From: Isurus oxyrinchus
Taxonomy: Eukaryota
Direction: 5' to 3'
DNA: 64,000 bases
Assembly (NCBI GenBank): GCA_026770705.1
Contig: JANJGN010000150.1
Coordinates: 124,001-188,000 of the forward strand
Made by a program: the position numbers and the translations under genes. Shown one piece after another: positions 11,401 to 64,000 of the stretch (position 1 is the stretch's first letter; each line of letters begins with the position of its first letter). Below the pieces are notes generated by a model that was given only the letters and a program-made list of their open reading frames with translations, did not search any database and was not told the origin of the DNA.

Positions 11401-14400
11401 CCTGGATCAGTCTCAAACACTGTAACTCAGCATGGTGTCACTCTGACCTATACTTCTGTTCTGACCCTGATCCCATCACTCAAACACCACAGACACAATC
11501 TCAGCTGCAGAGTGAGATATCCATCTGTTTCATCGGAGCAGACCCTCGTACTAACTGTACAATGTAAGTATGGACATCCTTCATTATACATTCGCTGGAA
11601 CAGTCTATATTGTGCACAGCAGGATCCCATAGAAAGGTATTCTGATGAGAACCAGATCATCTGTAGTTTAGGGAAAAACACTGACCAGAAAACAGTTAAT
11701 GACAGTTTCTGAACATTAACACTGGAGCTTTTTTTTCCAGCCAAGAAGCTGATAGAGCAGAGCATCATTCACAATATACTAACCCCCTGACAGTGCAGCA
11801 CTCCCTCAGTACTGACCGCCTGACAGTGCAGCACTCCCTCAGTACTGACCGCCTGACAGTGCAGCACTCCCTCAGTACTGATCCTCCAACAGTGCAGCAA
11901 TCCCTCAGTACTGACCCTCCAACAGTACAGAACTCCCTCAGCACTGACCCTCTGACAGTGTAGCACTCCCTCAGTACTGACCCTCTGACAGTGCAGCACT
12001 CCCTCAGTACTGACCTGCTGAAATTGCAGCTCTCCCTCAGTACTGACCCTCTGACATTGCAGCACTCCCTCAGTACTGACCCTCTGACAGTGCAGCACTG
12101 CCTCAGTACTGACCCTCCAATAATGAAACAATCCCTCAGTACTGACTCTCCGACAGTGCAGCACTCCTTCACTGCTAACCCTCCAACTCTGCAGTGCTCC
12201 CTCAGGACTGAAAATCCAACATTTCATATCTCCCTCCTGACTGACCCTCTGAAAATACAACAGATCCTCGGTCGAGTCCTTCAAACAGTGCTGCACTTCC
12301 ACAGTACTGAATCTCCCCCCCACCCACAGTGCAGCACTTCCACAGTACTGAACCTCTGACAGTGCAGCACTCCCTCAGTACTGACCCTCCCACCTGCAGC
12401 ACTCCCTCAGTACTGACCCTCCCACATGCAGCACTCCCTCAGTACTGACCCTCCCACATGCAGCATTCCCTCAGTACTGACCCTCCCACATGCAGCACTC
12501 ACTCAGTACTGACCCTCCCACAGTGCAGCACTCCCTCAGTACTGACCATCCCACATGCAGCACTCACTCAGTACTGACCCTCCCACAGTGCAGCATTCCC
12601 TCAGTACTGACCCTCCCACATGCAGCACTCACTCAGTACTGATCCTCCCACAGTGCAGCACTCCCTCAGTACTGACCCTCCCACATGCAGCACTCACTCA
12701 GTACTGACCCTCCCACAGTGCAGCACTCCCTCAGTACTGACCCTCCCACATGCAGCACTCCCTCAGTACTGACCCTTTGACAGTGCTGCACTACCTCACT
12801 ATTGGCTTTAAACTAAATAGTGTGTGGGGCGAATGTTTCTGGAGAGGGTATATGTACAGTTACAAACCAAAAGGATTTATTAGCATTGCAGGATAGCTGT
12901 TTTGGCAATGATACCCAGTGTGTGACAGGAAGGGACACAGTGTCCAAACATAAAAATACATCAGCAAATAGTGTCAGAGGGGGGGAAATGATAAAAAGAC
13001 AAAATTAATGGCTCTTTACTTAAATGCACAATGTATTTGGAATGCTGACCTTTATTTCAAAGGGAATGGAGTATAAAAATAGGGAAGTCTTGCTAAAACT
13101 TTACAAGGCACTAGTTAGACCACACCTAGAATACTGTGAGCAGTTTTGGTTCCCTTATCTAAGGAAAGATGTACTGGCATTGGAGGCAGTCCAGAGAAGG
13201 TTCACTAGGTTGATCCCAGTAATGGAGGGATTTTCATATGAGGAGAGGTTGAGTAGGATGGGCCTGTACTCATTGGAGTTTAGGAGAATGAGAGCTGACC
13301 TTATTGAAACATATAAGATTCTTAGGGCGCTTGACAGGGTAGATGCTGACAGGTTGTTTCCCCCTGTGGGAGAGTCTAGGACCAGAGGGCATAATTTCAG
13401 AGTAAGGGGTCACCCATTTAAGACAGAGATGAGGAGTTTCTTCTCTCAGAGGGTAGTGAATGTGTGGAATTCTTTACTGCAGAGAGCTGCAGAGGCTGGG
13501 TCATTAATTATATTCAAGGCTGAGAGACACAGTTTTTTAATCAGTCAGGGAATCAAAGGCTATGGGGAAGAGGCAGGAAAGTGAAGTTGAGGATTGTCAG
13601 ATCAGCCATGGTGTCATTGAATGGCGGAGCAGAGTTGATTGGCCGAATGGCCTCCTTCTGCTCTGACGTCTTGTGGTCTTATGGTCTTATCACCCTCCAA
13701 CAGTGCAGAGCTCCCTAATTACTGACCCTCCGACAGTGCAGCACTCCCTCAGTACTGACCCTCTGACAGTGCAGCACTCACTCAGTACTGACCCTCCGAC
13801 AGTGCAGCACTCCCTCAGTACTGACCCTCCAACAGTGCAGAGCTCCCTAATTACTGACCCTCCAACAGTGCAGCACTCCCTCAGTACTGACCCTCCGACA
13901 GTGCAGCATTCCCTAAGTACTGACCCTCCGAGAGTGCAGCACTCCCTAAGTACTGACCCTCCAACAGTGCAGCACTGCCTCAATACTGACCCTCCAACAG
14001 TGCAGCACTGCGTCAATACTGACCCTCCAACAGTGCAGCACTCCCTCAGTGCTGACCCTCCGACAGTGCAGCACTCCCTCACTACTGACCCTCCGTCAGA
14101 GCAGAGCTCCTAATTACTGACCCTCCAACAGTGCAGCACTCCCTCAGTACTGACCCTCCAACAGTGCAGCACTCCCTCACTACTGACCCTCTGACCGTGC
14201 AGCACTCCCTAAATACTGACACTCTGACAGTGCAGCACTCCCTCAGTATTGACCCTCCGACAGTGCAGAGCTCCCTCAGTATTGACCCTCCGACAGTGCA
14301 GAGCTCCCTAATTACTGACCCACCGACAGTGCAGCACTCTTTCAGTTCTGACCCTCCGACAGTGCAACACTACCTCAGTACTGACCATCCAACAGTGCAG

Positions 14401-15798
14401 AGCTCCCTAATTACTGACCCTCCGACAGTGCAGCACTCCCTCAGTACTGACCCTCCGACAGTGCAGCACTCCCTCAGTATTGATCCTCCGACAGAGCAAC
14501 ACTACCTCAGTACTGTCCCACCGACAGTGCAGCACTCCCTCAGTACTGATCCTCCAACAGTGCAACTCTCCCTCAGTACTGTCCCACCGACAGTGCAGCT
14601 CTCCCTCAGTACTGACCCTCTGACAGTGCAGAACTCCCTCAGTACTGATCCTCCGACAGTGCAACACTCCCTCAGTACTGTCCCACTGACAGTGTAGCAC
14701 TCCCTCAGTACTGATCCTCCGACAGTTCAACACTCCCTCAGTACTGTCCCACCGACAGTGCAGCTCTCCCTCAGTACTGACCCTCCGACAGTGCAGCACT
14801 CCCTCAGTACTGATCCTCCGACAGTGCAACACTCCCTCAGTACTGTCCCACTGACAGTGTAGCACTCCCTCAGTACTGATCCTCTGACAGTTCAACACTC
14901 CCTCAGTACTGTCCCACCGACAGTGCAGCTCTCCCTCAATACTGACCCTCCAACAGTGCACCACTCCATCAGTACTGAACCTTCAACAGTGCAGCACTCC
15001 CTCAGTACTGATCCTCCAACAGTGCAGCACTCCATCAGTACTGATTCTCCGACAGTGAAGTCCTCGCTCAGTACTGACTATGCGGCAGTGAAGCTTTCAC
15101 AGTACCCACCCACCATCAGTACAGCAGGTCCTCAGTACTCACCCTCCAACAGGGCAGCACTCCCTCAGTACTGACCCTCCAACAGTGCAGCACTCCCTCA
15201 GTACTGAACTGAAGAGTCTGCCTGAATTATGTGCTTTGTGGTGAAGGATTGATATTACACCTTTAACATTGTCAGGGTCTCTGAAAGTGCTTCACAGTCA
15301 ATGTAAGTAACTGATCTTTATTTGTTTTTAGATGCACCACAGAATCTCTCAATTACTTTTCATGATATGATTAACGCTTCATCGATCAATATAATTGAGG
15401 GGAATTCTGCAGTGATAATCTGCTCTGTCGAGAGCTTCCCAGCTTCTAACCTGACGTGGCGACATCTTAATGTCCCAATGAACAGAACAAGTTCCAACAA
15501 TGAGCTGTGGTTGGTGATTCCTCACGTTACATCCAGAGACACTGGAGACTATCAGTGTGTGGCAGAGAATGAACATGGAGCAGTGGAGGGGTTCATAACC
15601 ATCACTGTAGAACGTGAGTTAACACAAATTGCAATAACACTCCTCTCACATGCAGACGCACACACACACACATAGACATACACATGCACACACACTCACT
15701 CATGAACAGATGTATACAAACAGGCACACGCACACATGCGCAAACACATACACACACACACACGCACAAACAAACACACTCACATGTGCAGAAACACG

Positions 15799-15843
<45 letters not shown>

Positions 15844-18800
15844 ACACACACACACATGTGTGAGGTTCACTCTCCTCTCTCAGGGCTGCACTGGAGTCTC
15901 GGTGTCAGCCCTGAATCTGTGTTGAAGGAAGGTAAACTCCAGATCAACAAGACCCTGAATTGGATGAGCAACCTCCTGAACAGTGAATTGTAGATTTACC
16001 CCTCAGTGCTCCATCAATCAAATACAATTCATTGCCTGTCAAGCCCTTGGCGAATTCCTGAGGATGTGAATGGAACTTTCTTTCATTCTAGATTGACAGC
16101 ACCTCAACTGGTGGGGGAATGCAACTGCAGTGTGACAGTTTACATAGGCAGTGTCCATTATAAATGTGACAGAGGAACTTATTCTGAGGAAAGGTGCCTG
16201 GAAATGCATTCAGACATCAGATACAAAGAGATGATACATGGAGTCTTGCTGTGCACTGTGCTTGCTCACTCTAAAATCTTTATATGTTTATAGGCGCACC
16301 ACAGAATCTCTCATTTACTTCGCTTGAAATGATTAATGCTTCATCGATCAATATAATTGAGGGGAATTCTGCAGTGATAATCTGCTCTGTCGAGAGCTTC
16401 CCAGCTTCTAACCTGACGTGGCGACATCTTAATGTCCCAATGAACAGAACAAGTTCCAACAATGAGCTGTGGTTGGTGATTCCTCACGTTACATCCAGGG
16501 ACACTGGAGACTATCAGTGTGTGGCAGAGAATGAACATGGAGCAGTGGAGGGGTTCATAACCATCACTGTGGAACATTAGTTACACAGAATTCAACATTC
16601 TGTTTTTATTAGCTCATGGGATGTGGGTAGTGTTGACAAGACCAGAAATCATTGCCCATCTGTAACTGCCCCTTGAGAAGGTGGTGGTGAGCTGCCTTCT
16701 TTAACCACTGCAGTCCATGTGGTGTACGCACACCCACAGTGCTGTTAGGGTGGGAGTTCCAGGATTTTGACCCAACGACGGTGAAGGAATGGCCGATATA
16801 GTTCCAAGTCCCAGGGCAGACCACCACCTCATGTTCACCTCCAAGTCACACACCACACTGACTAGGAACTGTCTCGGTGGAAGAGGTTAAGGGTTTGGAA
16901 GGTGCTGTCGAAGGAGCCTTTGTGAGTTGCTGCAGTGCATCTTGTAGATGGTGCACACTGCTGCCACTGTGTGCCAGTGGTGGAGGGTATGAATGTTTAT
17001 GCTGGTGGATGGGCTGTCGATCAAACAAGCTGCTCCTGGATGGTGTCGAGCTTCTTGAGTGTTGTTGGAGCTGCACTCATCCAGCCAAGTGGAGATTATT
17101 CCATCAGACTCCTGACTTGTGCCTTGTCGATGGTGGACAGGCTTTGGGGAGTCAGGAGGTGAGTTATTCACCGCAGAGTTCCCAGCCTCTTACCCGCATT
17201 TGTAGCCACATTATTTCCTGTTGCCGGGCTGTTGCCAGGGCCAATAGCCTTTGCTGTATCCAGTATCATCAGCTGATTCCTGATGTCACGTGGAGTCAAT
17301 CGAATTGTCTGAAAGCTGACATCTGTGATGCTGGGACCCTCTGGAGGAGGCCGAGATGGAGCATCCACTCAGCACTTCTGGCTGAACATGGTTGCCAATG
17401 CTTCAGCCTTGTCGTTTGCACTGATGTGCTGAGCTCCCCCATCATTAAGGATGGGGATATTTGTGGAACATCCTCCTCCTGTTAGATCTTTAATTGTCCA
17501 TCACCATTCATGACTGGATGTGGCAGGACTGCAGAGCTTAGATCTGACCCGTTGGTTGTGGGATCGCTTTGCTCTGTCTATAGCATGTTGTTTCCGCTGT
17601 TTGGTGTGTATGTAGTCCTGTGTGTCACCTCAGCAGCTTGGCACCTCTGTTATATGTGAATCCTCCTTATAGAAACCTGCATGTACATGGATATTATCAA
17701 TAAATATTACATAGATAAATGTTGTTTGTATAGACCTTTCATGCATAGACAATATCACTTCACAAGTTCAGAATTACTACATGTACATAGGGAACCATTC
17801 TCAAACTGTACCGGAGTCATTCATTGGCTGATTTTACAGGGCGAGATTCCAATGAATGGAAAGCAGGATTGCTTGGACCGGGAATCTGTTTGAGTGTTGG
17901 ACTGAGTGGATTCTTCATCTTCAATTGTGTGAGAAAGTAAGTGTGAAGCTTTAATTGGTTGTTTTTGAACATGTTTTCTTCAAACTTCTCTCCTTATAGA
18001 AAGAACTTGCATTTCTATAACACCTTTTAGAATCGAAAACCCTTCACAGCCCCTGAAGAGCTTTGATGTTCACTCATTGTTTAACATCTCATCCAACACT
18101 CAATGTTTCACAATTCAGTCCTGTAACAGGCAGTGTTGACCTGGACCATAAAATACCTTGTGACTTCCTGAGGATGTGAAAGGGGATATATAAATGAAGA
18201 CATTTCTTTTGTTAGTGAATGCAATCTCTTTCCATTTTCAGTGTCTAACTCACTCTCTCTTACCTCCACTAATGCTCTCCTTCTCATTCTCTCTCTCTCT
18301 CATTCACTCTCTCCCCAATCTCCACTAATGCTCTCCTTCTCATTCTCTCTCTCTCTCATTCACTCTCTCCCCAATCTCCACTAATGCTCTCCTTCTCATT
18401 CTCTCTCTCTCTCATTCACTCTCTCTCCAATTTCCACTAATGCTCTACTTCTCATTCTTTCTCTCGTCCTCTTACACAATGTTCAGTATCTCACATTTTT
18501 AAGGAGCGCTGAGCAACATCTGCTCCTTCAGAAGATCCACCTCAACACCTGGAGCAAGCAGTGAATTGAAACTCGCTCACCAACTGCTCAGCTTTACACA
18601 GGAATCACGTCACAGAGTCAGGACACAAAGGGTTAACAGTTTGCTTACAACACAACACTAAGGCCCTACGTTTCAGTGAAAGGGTTTTCACAATTGTTCC
18701 CCAATTCCTCATTTTGTCTCACAGAGACACATCAACCCTTTCTCATTAAATACACAGAGGGAGCAGCACAGGAAGAGGTCATTCAGCCCAGTCAGAGCGT

Positions 18801-23110: not shown

Positions 23111-25271
23111 ATGCTCCTAATGTACTCGAGCCTGGTACACAGGAACTGGGGAAGGCCAATTCAGCCCCTTTAGCCTTTTACACAGGAACAGGAGGAGGCC
23201 CATTCAGCCCCTCGAGCCTATAACACAGGAACAGGAGGAGGCCCATTCAGCCCACTCAAGCCTGTTACACAGGAACAGGAGGAGGCCCATTCAGCCCAAG
23301 CAGAGCGTGTGGGCAGTTCCTGTCCAGACGAGCAGTCGGACAGGTCCCGGGTAAGTAATGGATCGATTGGAAATCACGGGGGAAGTTCTGAGGGCTCCTA
23401 ATCCATTGTCCTGTCTTCTAAATCAGCACCTTAATACTGACCCTTCAACAGTGCGGTACTCCCTCAGTACTGATCCTCCAACAGTGCAGCACTCCCTGAT
23501 TAATGTCCCTCTGACAGTGCAGCACTCCCACAGTACTGACCCTCCAACAGTGCAGCACTCCCTGATAAATGTCCCTCTGACAGTGCAGCACTCCCTCAGT
23601 ACTGACCCTCAAACAGTGGAGATCTCCCTCAGTACTGACCTTACAATAGTGCAACACTCGCTCAGTAATGACCATCCGACAGTGCAGCACTCCCTCAGTA
23701 CTGACACTGGGGAGTTTCAGTCTACTCTGTGGGGCAGACGTCCCATGAATGGGGTCTTGAATCCCACAACGTTCTGACCCCCTGAATTTGGCTGTGAAAC
23801 CCACTGACCCACAGGAGAAACTCCTGGTCAATGACTGTCCTGTCCACCTCTGAGCAGAAATATCACCACAGGGTCAGGACACAAACGGTTAACAGTTCAC
23901 CAACATCTCAAAACAAGAGCTGCTCTGTCACTTTGATCCAACTTCCTCATTTTGTCTCACAGAGACACATCAACCCTTTCTCATTAAATACACAGAGGGA
24001 GCAGCACAGGAAGAGGTCATTCAGCTCAAGCAGAGCGTGTGGGCAGTTCCTCCCCAGGCGAGCAGTCGGACAGGTCCTGGGTAAGTAACGGAACGATTGG
24101 AATTCACTTCCACCACCAACACCGTCCTTTGTTGTTGTTGTGACTTTATAAAGACAGATTCCAATGATTGATGCCTTTGAAAGATTTTTACTGATAATTG
24201 AGATCTGGTGTGAGGCTCAAGTCTGTTATACAGAACATCTTTCTAGCTCAAGGGATGAGGGAAGTGCAGAGACATGAGATTTGGGATGCCCTGAGGTAGT
24301 GAAAGGTGCTATGGAAATGCAAATCCTTCATTGTTTGTCTTTCTTACAGCCTTGTAACTCTCTGCAGAGCACCTATCATCCCACAGAGAATCAAATTATT
24401 CTGTGAAGACATTGTCTAAAAGCAGTTCTGATCTCTCGAGAGCTGTCGGACAAGAGGTGAGGTCTCATTAACTCCTTTCTCTTTCACAGCTTGAGAGTGA
24501 GATGTGGATGGAATATCTGGGAGTGGACGATGATCGGGAAATCTACTTCCTCTTGTCACTTTCCCAAGGTAATATCATCATCAGCTCAGACAGATTTATG
24601 TTTAACAGTCTTTGTAAAAGATCATTCTTATCTCTTAATCTCTGTAACCTTCTGCAACTCAACCAAACAACGTCCCAGATCTCTGTGTTACTCCAATTCC
24701 GGCCACTTGACCATCCCCCGATTCCCATCACTCCAATACTGGCGGCCGGGCCTACAGCTGCCTGGGGCCTGAGCTCTGGAATTCACTCCCTAAACCTCGG
24801 GGATGGAGGAGCTCAGAGGGTTTCATTTTACTGAGAATCACCACGACCACATCACAGCTGCAGTCAGAATAGACAGAGAGTCCAGCCCTCACACTTCCTG
24901 CACAGTTTCACCATAGCAACCACAATATGGAAATTTTAAAATACTGAAAGTTAAACTGAAGCTCAAACCAGTCAGTGTAGAGAGATGAGATGTTTACACA
25001 GTTTCCCTGTGTATCTTGTAGACACTGTGTTGGGTGGAAGACTGGCTTCACTAAACAGGGTCCTGAGGACCATGAGCCAATGTAGAATGAACTTGTCCAC
25101 TCCTGTGTCCAGGATTCTCTTCCCTCCGTTGTGAAACCTTGGGGGGTTCTTTGTGTGTCCTGTAGATGGTCCACACTGCAGCCACTGTGCCCCAGTGATG
25201 GAGGGGGTGGATATCAAGTCTAGTGGATCTACAAACCTTCCAGAGTTAAATATTGATATTTCTCTCCCCAG

Positions 25272-25647
25272 TTGGACTGTCACAAGAGTGGAAAGGCGAC
25301 ACTCCACGAGAGGTGACAGCGCAGGAAGGTTCGTGTGTACAGATTCCATGTCATTACAGTTATCCAGCACATTTCATAGGGAGATCACGTGTTGGAATCT
25401 GGTTGAAAGGAATAGATGGGAACCCACAGCCTAAATGGTCTATAGCCTTTCATTCCGAGGGTCACAGTCACAGGGATCAAAGATTCCGCCATCGTACCCG
25501 GCTGTCTGGAGACCTGAAAGATGGCGACTGTTCCCTGATTATAAACAAAATCAGACGGGAAGATGCAGGACCTTATTTTTTTCAGAATATAATTTGACAA
25601 CAGGAATAGATACAACTATTATCCTGTAACCCGGCTTCATGTTTCTG
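25272..25647 (+). pseudogene. Gene B V-set exon, disabled at the essential Arg
   Basis: 376 nt; T7 run at 25576-25582 (T6 in gene C paralogs) shifts frame just before AGA; the corrected frame still hits TAA at 25590-25592 (GAA in paralogs). Confidence 0.9.
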
Positions 25648-26122
25648 GTAAGTGCTGTGTTATAATTACTCAACAATTCACATTCAACACTCAATGGGAA
25701 ATAACACAAACTGTGACGTTTACAAATTAACACAAAACACAGCTTATTATAACACACTGTCTGATTCTCAATAACCTGGTGATAGCTTCCAGTTCAGTCC
25801 GAAAGTAACCTCTAATACTCACTTTAATATCAATGATGAAAAGCATTAACTGTATTATCAGGTTATCCACTCCCATCAATCTCTCCTGTCCTGTTTAAAA
25901 GTCTGACGTATCGATAAAAGAAAGATGTGCATTTCTGCAGCGCAATTTACCACCTCAGGAGGATCCAAATCCCTTCACAGCCAATGAAATTATTCCTGAA
26001 TTGTCGTCACAGATGTTAAACACAGCAGGCAGTTTGTGCACAGCAAGATCCAACAAACCACAAGGTGATAAATCACCCAGATCACTGAGGAAATGAGAAG
26101 CCAGTGAACTCAAACCTCTGGT

Positions 26123-26153
26123 CTGATGAAGAGTCATACGGACTCGAAACGTT
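26123..26153 (+). ncRNA. Minimal hammerhead ribozyme motif in a Penelope-derived insertion (~26127-26254)
   Basis: CTGATGA-A-GAGTC-ATACG-GACTC-GAAAC-GTT: both core boxes, 5-bp helix II, palindromic AACGTT helix III; helix I weak. Confidence 0.55.
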
Positions 26154-26506
26154 AACCCTGTCTTCCTCTCCACTGATACTGTCAGACCTGCTGAGTCTTT
26201 CCAGCAATTTTTGTTTTTGTTTCAGATTTCCAGCATCCGCAGTATTCTGCTTTTAACTCCAATCTCTGGTCTGAGCCTCTTCTCTCATCCAGTGTTCTCA
26301 ATTCACATGTCTCGGAGTGAACGTGTATTAAGCTGAGAGACAGAAACACTACTGCCAAAGAGCAAGAAAATCTTTCCTGATCATTGTAACCTCTCAGTTC
26401 TGATATCATCCTTGTAAAAGTGCTTTCTCTTGTGGGACTGTGATTTCTATTTGAACTGATGCTTCACGTTATATTTCTCTAAAAGGATCCATTCTCTGTC
26501 TGTTAG

Positions 26507-26803
26507 ATTTCACAGATAAACCCACGATATTCCCTGCTGAAATTATTGCAGGAAAGCGTGTGGATGTAAGCTGCACCTTCAACACAACGTGCAATGGAAC
26601 AGCAGCACCTGTCTTAACCTGGGACACTCCCACTGACGTACGTGGATCAGTCTCAAACACTGTAACTCAGCATGGTGTCACTCTGACCTATACTTCTGTT
26701 CTGACCCTGATCCCATCACTCAAACACCACGGACACACTCTCAGCTGCAGAGTGAGATATCCATCTGTTTCATCGGAGCGGACCCTCGTACTGACTGTGC
26801 AAT
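26507..26803 (+). pseudogene. Gene B C2-set exon 1 (open frame)
   Basis: 297 nt, nearly identical to 11267-11563 and 50786-51082. Confidence 0.9.
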
Positions 26804-27129
26804 GTAAGTACCGTCATCCTTCATTCTACATCAGCAATCCCTCAGCGCTGACCCTCTGACAGTGCAGCCCATTCTCAGTATCCACATTCTAAGGCCTCTC
26901 TAAGTGCTTCACAGTCGATAGAAGTTAATTGATATTTATTTGATTATTGCTGAATGAAGAGACAAGCTGTCTAAAGTTTTCATCTCACAGACAGTATTCT
27001 CCATGGCAACACCTCCACCTATCAGAGACCACTTGCCAACCAATCAGCACTCTCTTCCCATTAAGTATAAATTGTTGTTCACTTTCTGTTGGTTATCGTG
27101 CGAACGGGCTTCTTGATTCCTGCCCTGAG

Positions 27130-27277
27130 ATCTTAATGTCCCAAAATTCAGAACAAGTTCCAACAATGAGCTGTGGTTGGTGATTCCTCACGTTACATCC
27201 AGGGACATGGACACTATCAATGTGTTCAGAGAATGAACATGGAGCAGTGGAGGGGTTCATAACCATCACTGTGGAAC
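27130..27277 (+). pseudogene. Gene B C2 exon 2 remnant (3' half only)
   Basis: Homologous to the 3' half of 15332-15613 with indels; 5' half replaced by unrelated sequence ~26948-27129. Confidence 0.85.
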
Positions 27278-28952
27278 GTGAGTGTACACAGACTTCAACA
27301 TCTCTCTCAGATTCGAACACTACACAAACGCCCTCAAACATACAGACCTAAATAGACACGTGTAGACACACATATATGACCACACACAAAGACACACTCA
27401 CAAACAAACACACTAGCACAAGACTCCCTCATGGGTTACCTGACCTCCCTCAGTACTGCACTGGAGAGTGGGCTGCATTCTGGGATTTGTGTTCCCATTC
27501 GTATTTATGGAAGAATATGGAAATTACTCGTACAAACACTCAGATGCATAGAGGCACTCGTAGATACTATCTGCTTCTCCAACTCTCTCTCTCTCCCTTT
27601 AAGGAGCTACCTGAAACCTAACCCTTTGACGAAGAACTAGTCCCAACTCCTCCTTATCTGATTCTGTGATTTCTTTTGTGTATCTGAGAGTAAAAGAGAG
27701 GTGAAGAGGTTTAGTACGAGAATTCTTGCTGGTGAAAAGCTTACATCTTGTTCTCATTATTTCCGTGCACATATTTCCCAGTATGTCCAATGCCCCTGTT
27801 TATAATGATGACTGCCTATGTAAACGTCACGCTGTAGTTACAGCCTCCCACCAGTGGTGGCATTGTAGCACTTAATCCTTGTGTTTCCCAGCTTTTCAAG
27901 CAACTCCACTTCCCAGTTTGCTACACAAGCTGTGAGTTCATCAGAATTAAATTATTTCTCAAACAGTAGATTTGATAACTCATTTTATTGAAAACTTCTT
28001 CAGTGCCTCCCTGAAGGGTTTACACTCTCCGGGAAGCAGGAATAGGCTGGATGTTGGGGAGTTCATCTTTTCCCAGAGAGTAGGGATCCTCAGGAATGTG
28101 CTGTCAGTGGGTGTGGTGGTTGCTGATTCTCTGTCACCTTCAAGAGGGATCTGGAGTGGTTACTGACTGGGGGAGAGATCATGGAAGCGGAGAATGATAC
28201 AGCACAGGAGGAGGCCATTCAGCCCATTGAGCCTGTGCCAGGTCTTTCAATGTTCTATCCAATCAGATCCACTAACCACCACTCCACCTTGCCCCCATCT
28301 TCCTCCTTCAAGTGTTTATCCAATTTCCCTTTTGAAAGTTCCTATTGAATCTGCTTCTACCGCCCTTTCAGGCAGCACCTTCCAGATCACAACAACTCAC
28401 TCTGTCAAAACAAATTCTCCTCATCTCCCCCTCCGGTTCATCAATCTGTTTCCCTCTGGTTACCGACCCTCCTGCCCCTTAAATACATCAATACTGTTCA
28501 CCTCAACCACTCCCAGTGGGAGCGAGTTCCACATTCTCCCCTCTCTCTGGGTAAAGATTGGAACTGTTTATTAAGCGGGGGGTGTAAGTCCATGGGGGAG
28601 TCCATCTCGATCCTGCCCGATTCGCACACGCGTCCGAGATGGATTTCCACCCTGCACTAAACGTTTCCAGAATTTTCTACAGCACAATCCTGTACACAGC
28701 GATGGAGAGAAACACTGGACAGGGAGTCCAACAGCACAATGATCCATTCTCACCAATGTTCCACGCTAAGGGGAAAGTTCCGATTGTCCACTCTTAGAGT
28801 GTTTCCAATGAAAACATTCATTCCACATTGAATCCCAGTGGATGGGTCAATATTACAGCAAATGTTGCAGTGATATGAAGCTTGATTGTTCAGCCAGAGT
28901 GAGAGATTGAAAGCGGAGAGTCAGTGATGATTTCTTTCTGTGTGTTCTCTAG

Positions 28953-29092
28953 ACAGTGGAGGAGAGATTCTGCACGTGATCCTGATCCTGGGAATACGAG
29001 CTGTGATATTCCTTGTGGCTGTGTTTATCACTATCACTGGAGTCTGTGTCTGGGAGAGACAAACAGTGAAAGGAAGTCGACAGACTGTTTGA
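28953..29092 (+). pseudogene. Gene B TM exon with intramembrane Arg and short tail (HSGGEILHVILILGIRAVIFLVAVFITITGVCVWERQTVKGSRQTV*)
   Basis: Strong acceptor gttctctAG|, phase 1, long hydrophobic stretch with CGA Arg at 28997-28999, TGA 29090-29092. Confidence 0.8.
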
Positions 29093-29209
29093 AGCTTTGG
29101 ACAGCAACAATCTGGTCAGTCAGTGCGGACAAATAACGTGTGATGTTGGGTTAAGTTGTAATGAAACTGATCAGTGTCCTGGTTAGAATCACCTTCGTAT
29201 CAGAGAGGC

Positions 29210-29815
29210 ATTCCAGCACAGTGGGAGCCCATTCAGCCCATTGAGTCCATGCTGCCTCTCTGTAGAGCAATCCACTCAGTCCCATTCCCCCGCTCTATCC
29301 CTGTATCTCTTCAAGTTTATTTCCCCTCAAATGTCCGTCCAATTTCCTTTTGAAATTGTTCATCGTCTCCGCTTCCACCATCCTCGTAGGCAGCGAGTTC
29401 CAGCTCATTACCACTCGCTGTGTAAAAAAGTTCCTCCTCACATCCCCCCTCTGTCCAAAACCTTCAATCTGTGTCCCCCAGTCCTTGTACCATCAGCTAA
29501 TGGCAACAGCTTCTCTTTGTCTACCTTATCTAAACCCATCATCATCTTGTACACCTCGATCAGATCCCCCCTCAATCTCCTTTGCTCCAAGGAGAACAAC
29601 CCCAGCTTCTCCAACCCAACCTTGTAGCTAAAATCCCTCATCCCTGGACCCATTCTGCTCAATCTCCTCCCTAACCTCTCAAGGACCCTCACTTCCTTCC
29701 CAAAGTGAGGAGACCAGAACTGGACACAATACTCTAGTTGTGACCTAACCAGAGCTTTATAAATGTTCAGCATAACCTCCCTGTGTTTGTACTCAATCCC
29801 TCGATTTATGAAAAG
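29210..29815 (-). mobile_element. CR1 LINE 3' fragment
   Basis: IYKALVRSQLEYCVQFWSP...GLFSLEQRRLRGDLIEVYK. Confidence 0.9.
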
Positions 29816-32089
29816 CTTATTCTTTCCATCAGCACAAACAGCAATTTCCAAGCGGACTCCCATCAGCAGACAGAGTGCAATGAAACATCGGCATGCCTGC
29901 TTCTTCATGTACAGAGAGAAACCTGCAACGAGAGATTCTCCTTCTTCTCCTCAGCAAGCTGAAACTTTTCCTTATACCTGGTGCTCCCCAGTCCTGCTGT
30001 GTGGACACATCATAACCACGGCATTGTCTGGCTGTGTGCAGCCAACATGGTCGAATAGGAATGAACAGAAATGTGACGTTGCTAAACTCTGTTCTCTGAT
30101 TGGAATGTGCTTTCTGAATGCTGCACCTTTTTCATGCTGCGATACAGTGCAGCACTCCCTCAGTTCAAACCCTCCGACAGTGCAGCTCTCTCTCAGTTCA
30201 TACCCTCCGACAGAGCAGCACTCCCTCAGTTCAAACCCTCCGACAGTGCAGCACTCCCTCATTTCAGAGCCTCCGACAGTGCAGCACTCCCTCATTTCAG
30301 ACCCTCCGACAGTGCAGCACTCCCTCATTTCAGAGCCTCCGACAGTGCAGCTCTCCCTCATTTCAGAGCCTCCGACAGTGCAGCACTCCCTCAGTTCAGA
30401 CCCTCCTACAGTGCAGCACTCCCTCAGTTCAAACCCTCCGACAGTGCAGCTCTCCCTCAGTTCAAACCCTCCGACAGTGCAGCACTCCCTCAATTCAGAG
30501 CCTCCGACAGTGCAACACTCCCTCAGCTCAGACCCTCCGACAGTGCAGCACTCCCTCAGTACTGAACCTCCGACAGTGCTGCACTACCTCAGTACTTCTC
30601 CGCCGATGCTGCCAGACCTGCTGAGTTTTTCCAGGTATTTCTGTTTCTGTTTTTGTTTTGAATTTCCAGCATCTGCAGTTTTTTTGCTTTTAGTGCTGGG
30701 CAGTTGCTCAGCAAGGATTCGGGCCACAAAACATTGCGAGTGCTGTGGGTCTGCGCCCCGATTTAGAGAGCTGTGCTTGGCATGCCTATTCTAGTCCCAG
30801 TCCAGTGTGGTGGGGACAGCCTGGCAGTCCTGGGTTGGTCGTGCCCAGCATGGTATGCAGGACGTGGTCAGTCCCTGACACACGTCCATCCTGGGGGTGG
30901 GTGGCTTGATACTAGGCCGCAGGTGGCACAATCCCAGTCAGGGGAGGCATCTGCAGCCTGTCAGTGGGGAGCAGGTAATATAGAGGGTAGGGGTGGGGGT
31001 GGGAATCGAGGGGGGCCGGTGGTCTCTGTAAGTCACAGTACAATGGGCCTCTAGTTGGAGAGAGGTCAGGTCTACATGGGGCATTGGGATGTCAACATCA
31101 GACAGTCTAGGGAGGAGGACTGGGATGTCAACCCCGAACACAATAAGATCAAGGATTAGAGAGGAAGGGAGGAGACTGATTGGAAGGAGGGGAATGTGCA
31201 CATTATGCTCCTCCAGCACGATGGGAGGGACTGTGATGGTTACGGGGGTGGGGGGGTGAAGTGGGAGGGGATAGAAGCTTACCTGGTGGTATTGCCTCAG
31301 CCTCACCCTTTTTCAAGCTGATCCAATGTCGCAGTTGAAGAATAAGCTACAAAACAAATTGGCAGGGGAGGTCTCCCAGGGCCTGTGGGAGACATCACCC
31401 ACTGCATCTTCGGCCTGTTTGAAGGGGCACCCGAACAATTCCGGCTTTTCCAAATGATGAGGAAGACACAGCTGCACCCCGAGTCCCCTACTGGGGATCC
31501 AGAAGGTTGCAATAGCGCTGCGAGGGACTCATGGGCTCCACAGTGACTCCCTAATTAGCGACTGGAAGGTTTATGTTCATTTATCTTTATTATCCGTTCA
31601 TATTGAGCAATGGAGCTCCTGATTTGTCACCTTTCTGTACCTCGTCCAATGCTTCTGTTATCAGGACTTCCACATCGATGTGAAAGAGCCATGATGATAG
31701 CAGACAGTCGCACAATGGGAATGGCACTAGGCCAGTGATCCAGAGGCCCAGGTGAATGCTTTGAAGGCACGGGTTCAAATCCCACCACAGCAGCTGGAGG
31801 AATTTCAATTCGATTAATCAATAAATTTAATTGATTGATACATTTTTTTCTTCTTCATTTCAGGGATGTTGGTGTCGCTGACTAGGCCAGTATTTGTTGC
31901 CCATCCCCAATTGCCTTTGAGAACATCTGGATATCTGAGTTAGGATCAGGAGTAGGTCACTCAGTCCCTCGAACCTGCTCCGCCATTCAGTAAGATCATG
32001 GCTGATCTGATTGTCACCTCAACCTCACATTCCTGCCTACCCCCAATGACCTTTCACCCCCTTGTTAATCAAGAATCTATCTAGCTCTG

Positions 32090-45379: not shown

Positions 45380-45628
45380 TCAGTTTTTCTGGAACCTGAT
45401 CTGTGCGTATTCTGTGTCCTCGCTCCTGTGCACAGTCCTGTCACCGCCGGGCAGCTTTGAAAAGTTGATGTTGGCGTAGAGAAGCTCGTCGGTATTGTCG
45501 GAGTTCCCATGTCCAACATCGCCTCCCACTGGACCTTCAGAGAGACCCCGGGGAGCTGGGGTCTCCCCCTCACTAGTTGTGTCTCTGGTTGTGTTCCGGG
45601 GCTCAGTAATCAGCACGTTCTGTTCATC
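45380..45628 (-). CDS. Gene C last exon with ITIM (ELLYANINF) and ITSM (DTEYAQIRF)
   Basis: Long polypyrimidine acceptor ctttttctctgtAG|GAT; motif pair and spacing resemble CD33-related Siglec tails. Confidence 0.92.
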   Translation of the reverse strand, partial: DEQNVLITEPRNTTRDTTSEGETPAPRGLSEGPVGGDVGHGNSDNTDELLYANINFSKLPGGDRTVHRSEDTEYAQIRFQKN

Positions 45629-61709: not shown

Positions 61710-61944
61710 GGTAATCAGTGAGAAGATTGAGGATGTTTTGTGCTCTCAGCAAAACGTTTACCATGTGATGATCTGTCAACTCATATTTGGGCATCTGTAG
61801 TCATCAAGCTTCTCCATTGGCTCTGTGGGATTAGACTCCTCCTCCTCACCTCAGAGGCTTAAACTCAGGCGACAGAGTTCCCAATACATGGCGCTGGCCA
61901 AATGATCCAGGTTGACAATCCCTGGTAGCATTACTGAAGGAATA

Positions 61945-64000
61945 TTGCACTGTCAGAGGGTCAGTACCAAGGGAGAGCTGCACTGTCAGAGGGTCAGTAC
62001 TGAGGGAATGCTGCACTGTCAGGGCGTCAGTAATAAGGGAGTGCTGCACTGTCAGAGTGTCAGTACTGAGGCATTGCTGCATTGTTAAAGAGTCAGTACT
62101 GAGGGAGCGCTGTACTGTCTGTGGTCAGTATTGAGAAAGTGCTGAATTGTCGGAGAGTCAGTACTGAGGGAGTGCCGCACTGTCGGAGCGTATGAATTGT
62201 GGGAGTGCTGCACTGTCTTAATGTCAGTAATGAGGGAGTGCCGCACTGTCAGAAGGTAAGTAATGTGGGAGTGCTGCACTGTCAGAGGGTCATTAATGAG
62301 GGAGTGCTTAACTGTCAGAGTGTCAGTACTGAGGGACTGCTGCACTGTCAGAGGGTCTGTACTGAGGGAGTGTTGCACTGTCAGAGGGTCAGTACTGAGG
62401 GAGTACTTCACTGTCGGCGGGTCTGTACTGAGTGAGTTCCGCACAGTCGGAGGGTCAGTATTGAGGGGGTGCCGGACTGTGGGAGTGTTAGTACTGAGGT
62501 AGTGCACAGTGTGAGGAGATATCCTTTCATGGCAAAGTTTAACTGGAATTTATTAAAACAGAATTCTTGTACTGTGTGTTATTGCAAAAGAAAGGATTTG
62601 AGGAACTAAGTCTTGCTTCCATCAGCCTAAAAATAATTTTCATCGATTTCAATGATTTAGCATTGAAACCTCCCTCTTTGGGCACCAGTCTTGATTGAAA
62701 CAACTCACACAGCACTGTGGGAGGGTGAGTACTGAGGGAGTGCTGCGCTGTGGGAGGGTGAGTACTGAGGGATTGCTACACTGTGGGAGGGTGAGTACTG
62801 AGGGAGTACTGCACTGTGGGAGGGTGTGTACTGAGGGAGTGCTGCGCTGTGGGAGGGTGAGTACTGAGGGATTGCTACACTGTGGGAGGGTGAGTACTGA
62901 GGGAGTACTGCACTGTGGGAGGGTGAGCACTGAGGGAGTGCTGCACTGTAGGAGTGTCAGTACTGTGGGAGTGCTGCACTGTAGGAGTGTGAGTACTGAG
63001 GGAGTGCTGCACTGTGGGAGGGTGAGCACTGAGGGTGTGCTGCAATGTGGGAGGGTGAGTACTGTGGGAGTGCTGAACTGTCATAGGATCATTACTGAGG
63101 GAGTGCTGCACTGTCAGAGGGTCATTACTGAGGGAGTGCTGCACTGTCAGAGGGTCAGTACTGAGGGAGTGCTGCACTGTGGGAGGGCCAGTACTGTGGG
63201 AGTGCTGCACTGTTGGAAGGTCAGTAATGAGGGAGTGCTGCACTGTTGGAAGGTCAGTACTGAGGGAGTGCTGCACTGTGGTAGGGTGAGTGCTGAGGCA
63301 CTGCTGCACTGCCAGAGGGTCAGTACTGAGGGAGTGCTGCACTGTGGGAGGGTGAGTACTGAGGGAGTGCTGCACTGTGGGCAGGTGAGTGATGAGGGAG
63401 CGCTGCACTTTGGGAGGGTGAGTCCTGATGGAGTGTTGCACTATGGGAGGGTGAGTACTGAGGGAGTGCTGCACTGTCTAAATGTCAGTACTGAGGGAGT
63501 GCTGCACTGTCTAAATGTCAGTACTGAGGGAGTGCTGCACTGTGGGAGGGTGAGTACTGAGGGAGTGCTGCACTGTTGGAGGGTCAGAACTGAGGTAGTG
63601 CTGCACTGTGGGAGGGAGAGTACTGAGGGAGTGCTGCACTATGGGAGGGTGAGTACTGAGGGAGTGCTGCACAGTGGGAGGGTCAGTGCTGAGGTAGTGC
63701 TGCACTGTGGGAGGGAGAGTACTGAGGGAGTGCTGCACTGTGGGAGGGTCAGTGCTGAGGTAGTGTTGCACTGTCAGAGGGTCAGTACTGAGGGAGTGCT
63801 GCACTGTGGGAGGGTCAGTACTGAGGGAATGCTGCACTGTGGGAGGGTCAGTAATGAGGGAGTGCTGCACTGTCAGAGGGTCAGTAATGTGGGAGGGCTG
63901 CACTGTCAGAGGGTCAGTAATGAGGGAGTGCTGCACTGTCGGAGGGTCTGTACTGAGTGAGTTCCGCACAGTTGGAGGGACAGTATTGAGGGGGTGCCGG
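61945..64000 (-). repeat. 33-bp tandem arrays (61945-62505, 62710-64000)
   Basis: Same unit, reverse orientation. Confidence 0.95.

What the first reader, a model, noticed from the sequence alone, without database searches (positions are those of the whole stretch)
28953..29092. Activating-type TM exon (intramembrane Arg) in gene B
Seen: the exon reads ILHVILILGI-R-AVIFLVAVFITITGVCVW followed by 12 residues and a stop, with no Tyr. It shows no visible similarity to the A/C TM exon and does not appear in the ORF track in this frame. Established: a basic TM residue recruits ITAM adaptors (DAP12 for Siglec-14/15/16; FcR-gamma for LILRA/FcalphaR). Inference: B was the activating counterpart, perhaps built by recruiting a different TM exon.
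Basis: partly seen in the sequence, partly recalled or inferred. Interest (0 to 1): 0.8.

Follow-up and report, generated by a model that had tools for sequence, protein, structure and literature searches.

The report
Shark activating-type arginine membrane exon
This is a real, spliced shark exon that gives Siglec-like immune receptors a membrane anchor with a buried arginine and a tiny tyrosine-free tail, the usual build of an activating receptor. The gene copy it belongs to here is broken, and both public annotation and this scan already hold the same exon type.

Summary
An AG acceptor at 28951-52 opens a phase-1 exon reading SGGEILHVILILGIRAVIFLVAVFITITGVCVWERQTVKGSRQTV*.

- **It is not chance.** Searched against 1.84 billion proteins, the 45 residues match only the extreme C-termini of shark Ig-domain receptors (best E 1.2e-12). 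With a word search, that makes 11 proteins from 6 species.
- **Conservation.** All 11 keep ILGIRA, with the Arg invariant. None has a tyrosine after it, and each ends 3-12 residues past the helix.
- **Shared cassette.** The exon follows at least three different ectodomain builds: Siglec-like V+C2 (±Ig), CD22-like C2 arrays, and SLAM-like. It has no demonstrable similarity to the A/C membrane exon.
- **Exon limits.** RNA-like contigs of two organisms join a C2 exon to exactly 28953. One joins 29114 to 29833. The exon is therefore internal (28953-29114, 162 nt, phase 1-1), with the stop 22 nt before its donor.
- **Gene B is a pseudogene.** It has a leader frameshift, a V-exon frameshift plus a nonsense codon, and only a remnant of Ig3.
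- **Still inferred.** Adaptor pairing (DAP12, FcR-gamma or CD3-zeta type) is untested.

This scan found the same exon type at least nine times before on other DNA of this genome. It is ordinary: a new member of a known kind.

The parts
24530..24568 (+). Gene B leader exon (ATG at 24530, donor GT at 24569-70). It has a 1-nt deletion after 24543 relative to the leaders of genes A and D, so the frame is lost after MIGKS.
   Evidence: Alignment A2. Read laying lists 'T put in behind 24543' for paralog contigs.
25272..25647 (+). Gene B V-set exon, 376 nt, so not a multiple of 3. It has an extra T in a T run at about 25576. In the frame used by the paralogs, GAA is replaced by TAA at 25590-92. As read, the frame gives YFFQNII and stops at 25595-97.
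   Evidence: Alignment A1 of the A, B, C and D V exons, translations, and a V-to-C2 GT..AG joint 25646->26506 in X1 and X6.
26507..26803 (+). Gene B C2-set exon, 297 nt, open, phase 1-1, with donor CAAT|gtaagt. It is 97% identical to gene A's C2 exon and 95% to gene C's.
27128..27283 (+). Remnant of a third Ig exon. Only the 3' half is left, with two 1-nt deletions and no acceptor. It lies inside the C2-to-TM intron.
   Evidence: Alignment A4 against gene A's two Ig3 exons and blastn.
28931..28952 (+). Polypyrimidine tract and AG acceptor: tttctttctgtgtgttctctag.
   Evidence: The splice joint lands at 28953 (reported as 26801->28951, see report) in X1 and X6.
28953..29114 (+). The Arg-TM cassette exon, 162 nt, phase 1-1. 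It encodes a short stalk (SGGE), a 28-residue hydrophobic segment with Arg at its 10th position (CGA 28997-99), and the 12-residue tail ERQTVKGSRQTV. The stop TGA is at 29090-92, followed by 22 nt of untranslated sequence up to the donor CTG|gtcagt.
   Evidence: Homologs. Joints, and a 165-nt contig lying exactly on 28951-29114.
29833..30139 (+). Start of the next exon, which is untranslated because the stop precedes it. Acceptor ttccatcag|CAC. Positions 30030-30139 are 81% identical to the 3'UTR just after gene C's ITIM exon (45354-45242, minus strand). The 3' end of this exon was not determined.
   Evidence: Joint 29113->29832, GT..AG, in X2, and an X6 contig that starts at about 29828. blastn.

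Best explanation
Positions 28953-29114 are a genuine copy of a conserved shark exon cassette. It supplies an Ig-type surface receptor with a short stalk, a single membrane helix carrying an invariant arginine about one third of the way in from the outer face (motif ILGIRA), a very short tyrosine-free tail, and its own stop codon.

The exon is phase 1-1, like the Ig exons, and ends translation itself. Placed behind any set of Ig exons, it therefore yields a tail-less receptor. By analogy with mammalian KIR-S, LILRA and Siglec-14/16, such a receptor can only signal by pairing its buried Arg with the membrane Asp of an ITAM adaptor dimer (DAP12, FcR-gamma or CD3-zeta type).

In this window the cassette is the last coding exon of gene B, a Siglec-like V-C2 gene. 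Its ectodomain exons closely match the neighbouring genes A and C, and C bears ITIM motifs. B is therefore the activating-type partner of a paired set. This copy of B is a pseudogene, with lesions in the leader, V and Ig3 exons, although the cassette exon itself is still intact.

Shown: the exon's sequence, its splice boundaries, its conservation, its sharing between families, and B's lesions. Inferred: adaptor pairing and an activating function.
For: - Homology: the 45-residue translation, scored against 1.84 billion proteins, gives eight real matches, all ending at or within two residues of the C-terminus of a shark Ig-domain protein. The best are E 1.2e-12 and 7.7e-11, at 68-80% identity.
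- More relatives: word searches add two complete 272/273-aa V-C2-TM proteins of Scyliorhinus canicula and a 987-aa S. torazame protein.
- Source names: CD33-like, Siglec-12/13/14, CD22-like, sialoadhesin-like and SLAM family 9-like, from Scyliorhinus, Chiloscyllium, Hemiscyllium, Rhincodon and Mustelus.
- Conservation: a gapless alignment of 12 cassettes has invariant L, ILGIRA, IF, V, G and CV. No sequence has Tyr after the Arg. Tails are 3, 5, 8 or 12 residues.
- Architectures: Pfam shows at least three different ectodomain builds in front of the same cassette.
- Splicing: contigs of X1 (organism A) and X6 (organism B) join a C2 exon to 28953. An X2 contig joins 29114 to 29833 with GT..AG ends. 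An X6 contig lies exactly on 28951-29114. No such joint is listed for the large DNA-like run X17.
- Paired context: V and C2 exons are shared with A, C and D at 82-97%. Gene C's last exon encodes LLYANI and TEYAQI. The A/C membrane exon has no charge.
- Pseudogene status.
Against: - No experiment links this Arg to any adaptor. No shark adaptor gene was examined here, because a query sequence would have had to come from memory.
- The spliced contigs read G where the window has T at the last base of the C2 exon. They may therefore come from an allele or a near-identical paralog rather than from this copy of B.
- The runs are held as contigs and their RNA nature is a guess by the tool.
- B's V-exon lesions could not be checked in independent data. 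At 25549 every contig carried the paralogs' letter. One of the lesions lies in a T homopolymer.
- The related proteins are automatic gene models, not cloned cDNAs.
Confidence: 0.8

Rival explanations
1. The locus still makes a working activating receptor. Either the lesions in B are haplotype-specific or assembly errors, or the cassette exon is used by transcripts that start elsewhere, at another promoter or as read-through from gene A upstream on the same strand.
For: The cassette exon is fully open and keeps every position that is invariant in the family. Contigs near-identical to the window cover B's introns and the acceptor region in X1 and X2 (table 8), so the locus is represented in RNA-like data. 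One V-exon lesion is a T7-versus-T6 homopolymer, a typical assembly error.
Against: There are five separate lesions in three exons, including a base substitution to TAA that no homopolymer error explains. The observed C2-to-TM joint carries G where both B and A have T, so it comes from neither gene as assembled here. No contig with B's own V-exon letter at 25549 was found in any run.
Confidence: 0.15
2. The buried Arg does not recruit an ITAM adaptor. It might serve another role, such as ER retention or degradation unless masked by a different partner, pairing with a DAP10-like YxxM adaptor, or simply anchoring decoy receptors that do not signal.
For: Nothing in the sequence names the partner. 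[quoted passage not shown] The Arg's depth, position 10 of a 28-residue hydrophobic stretch, fits neither the DAP12 nor the FcR-gamma pattern cleanly (my own knowledge of those complexes, not tested).
Against: The Arg and its neighbours (ILGIRA) are strictly conserved across six species and at least three receptor families, while the tail is free to vary in length. That is the pattern expected of a specific intramembrane contact. In every well-studied vertebrate family, this build together with an ITIM-bearing twin means ITAM-adaptor coupling (PMC6288428; PMC2213150).
Confidence: 0.12
3. The stretch is a chance hydrophobic open frame behind a chance AG, not an exon.
For: About eight other non-repetitive hydrophobic 19-mers with Kyte-Doolittle score of 2.3 or more occur in the six frames of the window. 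The exon is flanked by transposon debris.
Against: There are specific matches at E down to 1.2e-12, all ending at or within two residues of the C-terminus of shark Ig receptors. Splice joints fall at both predicted boundaries.
Confidence: 0.01

Closest known systems
Automatically annotated shark proteins with the same cassette, e.g. Scyliorhinus canicula 'sialic acid-binding Ig-like lectin 14 isoform X2' (P0013, 273 aa), 'Siglec 13' (P0012, 272 aa) and S. torazame 'CD33-like' XP_072325011.1 (P0001)
   Same: They have the same V + C2 + Arg-TM build. The cassette is 78-80% identical, with ILGIRA, the tail KGSRQTV (P0001, P0002) and the C2 exon joined directly to the cassette.
   Different: Those models are open reading frames, whereas gene B here is broken upstream of the cassette. 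The S. canicula tails stop after ERRTV.
Human paired Siglecs: Siglec-14 (partner of Siglec-5) and Siglec-16 (partner of Siglec-11), which are DAP12-coupled
   Same: A Siglec-type ectodomain nearly identical to that of an ITIM-bearing neighbour, a basic residue in the membrane helix, and a short tail. Siglec-16 also has non-functional alleles (PMC6288428).
   Different: There is no sequence relationship between the membrane segments. The shark cassette is a separate exon shared with non-Siglec families. Adaptor use is unknown. Sialic-acid binding by the shark proteins is untested.
Activating KIR and Ly49 (short-tailed KIR, Ly49D/H)
   Same: [quoted passage not shown] Gene B fits that life cycle.
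   Different: Activating KIR arose by a few point changes within the inhibitory gene's own TM and tail exons (PMC2213150). Here the membrane exon is a different, unrelated cassette.
Arg-in-membrane, FcR-gamma-coupled Ig receptors (Fc-alpha-RI, LILRA, CHIR-AB1)
   Same: An arginine rather than lysine in the helix, and a minimal tail (PMC4016189).
   Different: In those receptors the Arg lies close to the outer end of the helix (my own knowledge). Here it is at position 10 of 28. No sequence similarity was found: the full-library search returned no convincing non-shark match.

Membership tests
Shark Arg-TM cassette (ILGIRA exon) family | Sequence similarity over the whole cassette, with the invariant ILGIRA...IF...V...G.CV positions | tested here: met
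   E 1.2e-12 to 1e-4 against eight shark proteins. In the gapless 12-sequence alignment, the window copy keeps every invariant position.
Shark Arg-TM cassette (ILGIRA exon) family | Lies at the extreme C-terminus of an Ig-domain receptor and carries the stop codon | tested here: met
   All matches end at or within two residues of the protein's last residue. In the window, the stop is at 29090-92, inside the exon.
Shark Arg-TM cassette (ILGIRA exon) family | Spliced in phase 1 directly behind an Ig exon | tested here: met
   The C2-to-cassette joint appears in contigs of X1 and X6 at the predicted acceptor. The exon lengths fit phase 1-1.
Activating partner of a paired Ig receptor set (KIR-S / LILRA / Siglec-14/16 type) | Basic residue inside the single membrane helix | tested here: met
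   Arg (CGA 28997-99) at position 10 of a 28-residue hydrophobic stretch.
Activating partner of a paired Ig receptor set (KIR-S / LILRA / Siglec-14/16 type) | Short cytoplasmic tail without ITIM, ITSM or any tyrosine | tested here: met
   The tail is 12 residues, ERQTVKGSRQTV. None of the 12 family members has Tyr after the Arg.
Activating partner of a paired Ig receptor set (KIR-S / LILRA / Siglec-14/16 type) | Ectodomain closely similar to a linked inhibitory receptor with ITIM | tested here: met
   B's V exon is 82-89% identical, and its C2 exon 95-97% identical, to those of A, C and D. Gene C's last exon encodes LLYANI and TEYAQI.
Activating partner of a paired Ig receptor set (KIR-S / LILRA / Siglec-14/16 type) | Physical, charge-dependent association with an ITAM adaptor, and activating signalling | not testable with these tools
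   This needs co-expression and mutagenesis. No adaptor gene was examined.
Activating partner of a paired Ig receptor set (KIR-S / LILRA / Siglec-14/16 type) | Open reading frame able to give a protein | tested here: not met
   Gene B has a leader frameshift, a V-exon frameshift plus TAA, and a broken Ig3. The exon is of the activating type, but this gene copy is a pseudogene.
Siglec (sialic acid-binding Ig-like lectin) | N-terminal V-set domain of the Siglec/CD22 type | tested here: met
   The relatives P0013, P0003 and P0007 hit Pfam V-set and Ig_CD22 above the cut-off. B's V exon aligns with them and with A, C and D.
Siglec (sialic acid-binding Ig-like lectin) | Conserved ligand-binding Arg in the YFFR motif of the V domain | tested here: inconclusive
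   A and C read YFFRIEFD, and D reads YFFG. As assembled, B reads YFFQNII and then stops; the Arg codon appears only in the paralogs' frame and is followed by TAA. P0001 has YHFS at this place.
Siglec (sialic acid-binding Ig-like lectin) | Binding of sialylated glycans | not testable with these tools
   This needs a binding assay with a recombinant ectodomain.

The most novel reading that the evidence does not exclude
The 162-nt, phase 1-1 exon is a portable 'activation cassette'. By exon shuffling it has been dropped behind the Ig exons of at least three unrelated receptor families in galeomorph sharks (Siglec-like, CD22-like, SLAM/CD2-like). Because it carries its own stop, it turns an inhibitory gene into an adaptor-dependent activating one in a single step, and the old downstream exons are demoted to 3'UTR. 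In gene B, the exon after the cassette still shares 113 nt with the 3'UTR of the ITIM gene C. That would be a different route to paired receptors from the point-mutation route documented for KIR and Ly49. It would also imply a single shark adaptor serving many receptor families.
Probability: 0.4. Interest if true: 0.55.

Novelty: new member of a known kind. Interest (0 to 1): 0.3.

Why it matters
Paired activating and inhibitory receptors are a recurrent answer to pathogens that exploit inhibitory receptors. They are well described in mammals and teleosts but hardly at all in cartilaginous fish, and I found no paper on shark paired Siglec-like receptors in the library searched.

As a family, the ILGIRA cassette shows that sharks build activating partners by reusing one conserved arginine-bearing membrane exon across several receptor families. 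That gives a concrete handle for finding the shark adaptor.

This particular copy adds three things:
- the exact exon limits;
- the fact that the exon is internal, with a stop that should escape nonsense-mediated decay;
- an example of an activating partner that has since decayed, as seen for Ly49 and SIGLEC16.

On its own it is ordinary. The same design is already in automatic annotation and has been met repeatedly in this scan.

Tried and rejected
1. Relic of an ITIM exon. I tested whether the exon after the cassette (29833-30029) is a decayed copy of gene C's ITIM/ITSM coding sequence. A MAFFT alignment looked suggestive. However, a local alignment scored 17 against shuffles averaging 16.6 (p=0.44), so I rejected it. 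Only the 3'UTR part, 30030-30139, is homologous.

2. Descent from the A/C membrane exon by mutation (Met to Arg at G-I-M versus G-I-R). The protein score is marginal against C (p=0.015) and null against A (p=0.46). DNA with flanks is null. Homology is not demonstrable.

3. A second copy of the cassette in the window. None was found by blastn or tblastn.

5. Literature on shark DAP12, FcR-gamma or paired Siglecs. Six searches gave nothing specific.

6. Earlier notes of this scan on adaptor genes in this genome. None were found.

7. A canonical poly(A) signal after the stop. There is none on the + strand before 31820, which fits a further spliced 3'UTR exon.

N runs were left untouched.

Full report
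**What is at the coordinates**

The window is a cluster of Siglec-like Ig-receptor genes embedded in transposon debris and a 33-bp satellite.

- On the + strand, gene A has a V exon at 10476-, a C2 exon at 11215-, two Ig3 exons at about 15307 and 16275, and an uncharged membrane exon at 17842-17937.
- Gene B follows at 24.5-30 kb.
- On the minus strand, gene C has a V exon at 51731-52201, a C2 exon at 50730-51134, an uncharged membrane exon at 47929-48030, and a last exon at 45383-45628. That last exon encodes LLYANI (ITIM) and TEYAQI (ITSM-like).
- A further V exon (D) lies at 56070-56555.

At the finding, a polypyrimidine tract and AG (28951-52) open a phase-1 exon. From 28955 it reads SGGEILHVILILGIRAVIFLVAVFITITGVCVWERQTVKGSRQTV, then TGA at 29090-92. 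The Arg is CGA at 28997-99, at position 10 of a 28-residue hydrophobic run. No Tyr follows it. The frame does appear in the mechanical ORF list at a 20-aa threshold.

**Is it more than chance?**

Hydropathy alone is not decisive. About eight other non-repetitive 19-mers reach a Kyte-Doolittle score of 2.3 somewhere in the six frames, although this one, at 2.87, is the best.

Homology is decisive. I scored the 45 residues with phmmer against 1.84 billion representative proteins. That gave ten hits at E<=0.001. Two are low-complexity, multi-stretch matches. The other eight all end at or within two residues of the last residue of an Ig-domain protein. The top E-values are 1.2e-12, 7.7e-11 and 2.7e-08, and identity over the eight is 68-80%.

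Their sources are NCBI models from Scyliorhinus torazame, Chiloscyllium punctatum, Hemiscyllium ocellatum, Rhincodon typus and Mustelus asterias. They are named CD33-like, Siglec-12, Siglec-13, CD22-like, sialoadhesin-like and SLAM family 9-like. Two word searches restricted to the cassette added two complete S. canicula proteins of 272 and 273 aa (leader, V, C2, cassette) and a 987-aa S. torazame protein.

**Conservation**

The 12 cassettes align without a gap. Invariant positions are one Leu before the helix, ILGIRA, IF, V, G and CV. The Arg is present in 12 of 12. No sequence has a tyrosine after it. Every protein ends 3, 5, 8 or 12 residues after the helix.

The tail can be cut at different points while the helix face around the Arg is fixed. 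That is what a specific intramembrane contact predicts.

**One cassette, several receptor families**

Pfam scans show the cassette behind these builds:
- a Siglec/CD22-type V domain plus a C2-set domain (P0001, P0013);
- the same plus four more Ig domains (P0003);
- arrays of four to eight C2-type Ig domains with no Siglec-type N-terminal V domain (P0004, P0005);
- a single V domain (P0007);
- a SLAM/CD2-like pair (P0008, P0009).

Within S. torazame alone, the cassette occurs in CD33-like, multi-V and SLAM-like contexts.

The cassette has no demonstrable relationship to the uncharged membrane exon of genes A and C. Protein local alignment against shuffles gives p=0.015 versus C and 0.46 versus A. 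DNA with 150-nt flanks gives p=0.3-0.4. A versus C is unmistakably homologous.

**Splicing and the true exon limits**

I laid contigs of four public runs on 24400-30000. The runs were X1 and X2 (organism A), X6 (organism B, RNA by the tool's guess) and X17 (a large, DNA-like run of organism B).

- The listed pieces of organism A are mostly 98-99.7% identical to the window, though some are only 94-96.5%. Those of organism B range from about 92% to over 99%.
- Contigs in X1 and X6 join 25646/7 to 26506/7 with GT..AG ends (V to C2).
- Contigs in X1 and X6 join the end of the C2 exon to the cassette. The tool reports this as 26801->28951, because the contig reads ...GTGCAAG|ACAGTGG and the G fits the intronic AG. 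The real junction is 26803|28953.
- An X2 contig joins 29113/4 to 29832/3 with GT..AG ends.
- An X6 contig of 165 nt lies exactly on 28951-29114.
- Another X6 contig starts at about 29828, with 25 unplaced letters before it.
- No such joint is listed for X17.

So the exon is 28953-29114: 162 nt, phase 1-1, with donor CTG|gtcagt. It is internal, not terminal. The stop lies 22 nt before the exon junction. By the usual 50-55 nt rule (established knowledge), that is too close to trigger nonsense-mediated decay. The following exon, from 29833, is untranslated.

Caveats:
- The runs are held as contigs, so they show presence rather than abundance. The tool itself warns against reading depth.
- The spliced contigs carry G where the window, in both B and A, has T at the last C2 base. 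They may come from an allele or a close paralog rather than from this very copy.

**Gene B is a pseudogene**

- The leader exon (ATG at 24530) lacks one T after 24543 compared with A and D, so the frame is lost after MIGKS.
- The V exon (25272-25647) is 376 nt. It has an extra T in a T run at about 25576. Independently, it has GAA replaced by TAA at 25590-92 in the paralogs' frame. As assembled it reads YFFQNII and then stops.
- The C2 exon (26507-26803) is intact.
- In the intron before the cassette lies the 3' half of a third Ig exon (27128-27283), with two 1-nt deletions and no acceptor.

The homopolymer change could be an assembly slip, but the others are not of that kind. I could not confirm the V-exon lesions in independent data. 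At B's private letter, 25549, every contig of every run carried the paralogs' letter.

The cassette exon keeps every invariant family position, so the decay is probably recent. A decayed activating partner beside intact inhibitory ones is the pattern described for Ly49 pseudogenes (PMC2213150) and for non-functional SIGLEC16 alleles (title of reference 82 in PMC6288428).

**How it most likely works**

Shown: a membrane helix with a conserved buried Arg, no signalling motif of its own, and linked ITIM-bearing twins.

Inferred from established knowledge of KIR-S, LILRA, Fc-alpha-RI and Siglec-14/16 (PMC6288428; PMC4016189; PMC2213150): the Arg pairs with the membrane Asp of a disulphide-linked ITAM adaptor dimer. 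That pairing is needed both for surface expression and for Syk-type signalling.

The sequence does not tell which adaptor. The Arg's depth is intermediate between the DAP12 and FcR-gamma/zeta patterns (my own knowledge). [quoted passage not shown] I could not search for the shark adaptors, because that needs query sequences I may not type from memory.

**A possible trace of origin**

The exon after the cassette shares 113 nt (81% identity, E 1.5e-25) with gene C's 3'UTR, starting 26 nt after C's stop codon. This hints that B's last exon descends from an ITIM-type last exon, demoted to 3'UTR when the stop-bearing cassette was put in front of it. However, its 5' 197 nt show no significant similarity to C's ITIM coding sequence (p=0.44). 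This remains a lead only.

**Relation to what is known and to this scan**

The design is the classical activating partner of a paired receptor set. The proteins already sit in automatic annotation of at least six shark species under mammalian-style names. I found no paper describing them in the library searched.

This scan had already reported the same 140-letter exon at least nine times on other DNA of this genome. One copy lies 640 kb beyond this window, also in a broken gene. I re-tested the claims of those notes that matter here: conservation in other sharks, presence in public annotation, reuse by several families, and splicing.

**Limits**

**Verdict**

The exon is real and of the activating type, but it is a further, pseudogene-linked member of an exon family already seen.

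Noticed in passing
window 30030-30139 (+) versus 45354-45242 (-): The untranslated exon after B's cassette shares 113 nt (81% identity) with the 3'UTR that begins 26 nt after the stop of gene C's ITIM exon. The part nearer the acceptor (29833-30029) shows no significant similarity to C's ITIM coding sequence.
   Followed up: partly
window 45383-45628 (-): Gene C's last exon encodes a classical inhibitory tail, with ITIM LLYANI and an ITSM-like TEYAQI 22 residues later. This is the arrangement seen in mammalian CD33-related Siglecs.
   Followed up: partly
window 16560-16600 (+): The second of gene A's two tandem Ig3 exons has ATTAGT where the first, and B's remnant, have GTGAGT at the donor. 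This exon copy may therefore not be spliced normally. The same reader noted it separately (s1-868801).
   Followed up: no
window 56070-56555 (-) and protein P0001: The V exon of gene D reads YYFFG, and the S. torazame activating-type protein P0001 reads YHFS, where Siglecs have the ligand-binding Arg (YFFR in A and C). Some members of the cluster may not bind sialic acid.
   Followed up: no
proteins P0014 and P0009 versus P0012/P0013, P0003-P0005 and P0001/P0002: Cassette tails end at four different points (WETNS/WEQNS, ERRTV, ..KGS, ..KGSRQTV). In the window, the codon after KGS is CGA, which is one CpG transition away from TGA. The stop seems to move freely along the exon.
   Followed up: partly
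window 11700-15200, 23350-23800, 30144-30600, 46058-46760, 61850-64000: A 33-bp satellite, which translates as [11 protein letters not shown] in one frame, fills the introns and intergenic DNA of the whole cluster on both strands. It produces long spurious ORFs.
   Followed up: no
window 26820-27058: In all four runs, including organism A whose other listed contigs are mostly 98-99.7% identical to the window, the listed contigs over this intronic stretch differ from the window by 6-8%. B's own sequence here was not seen in the listed pieces of any run.
   Followed up: no
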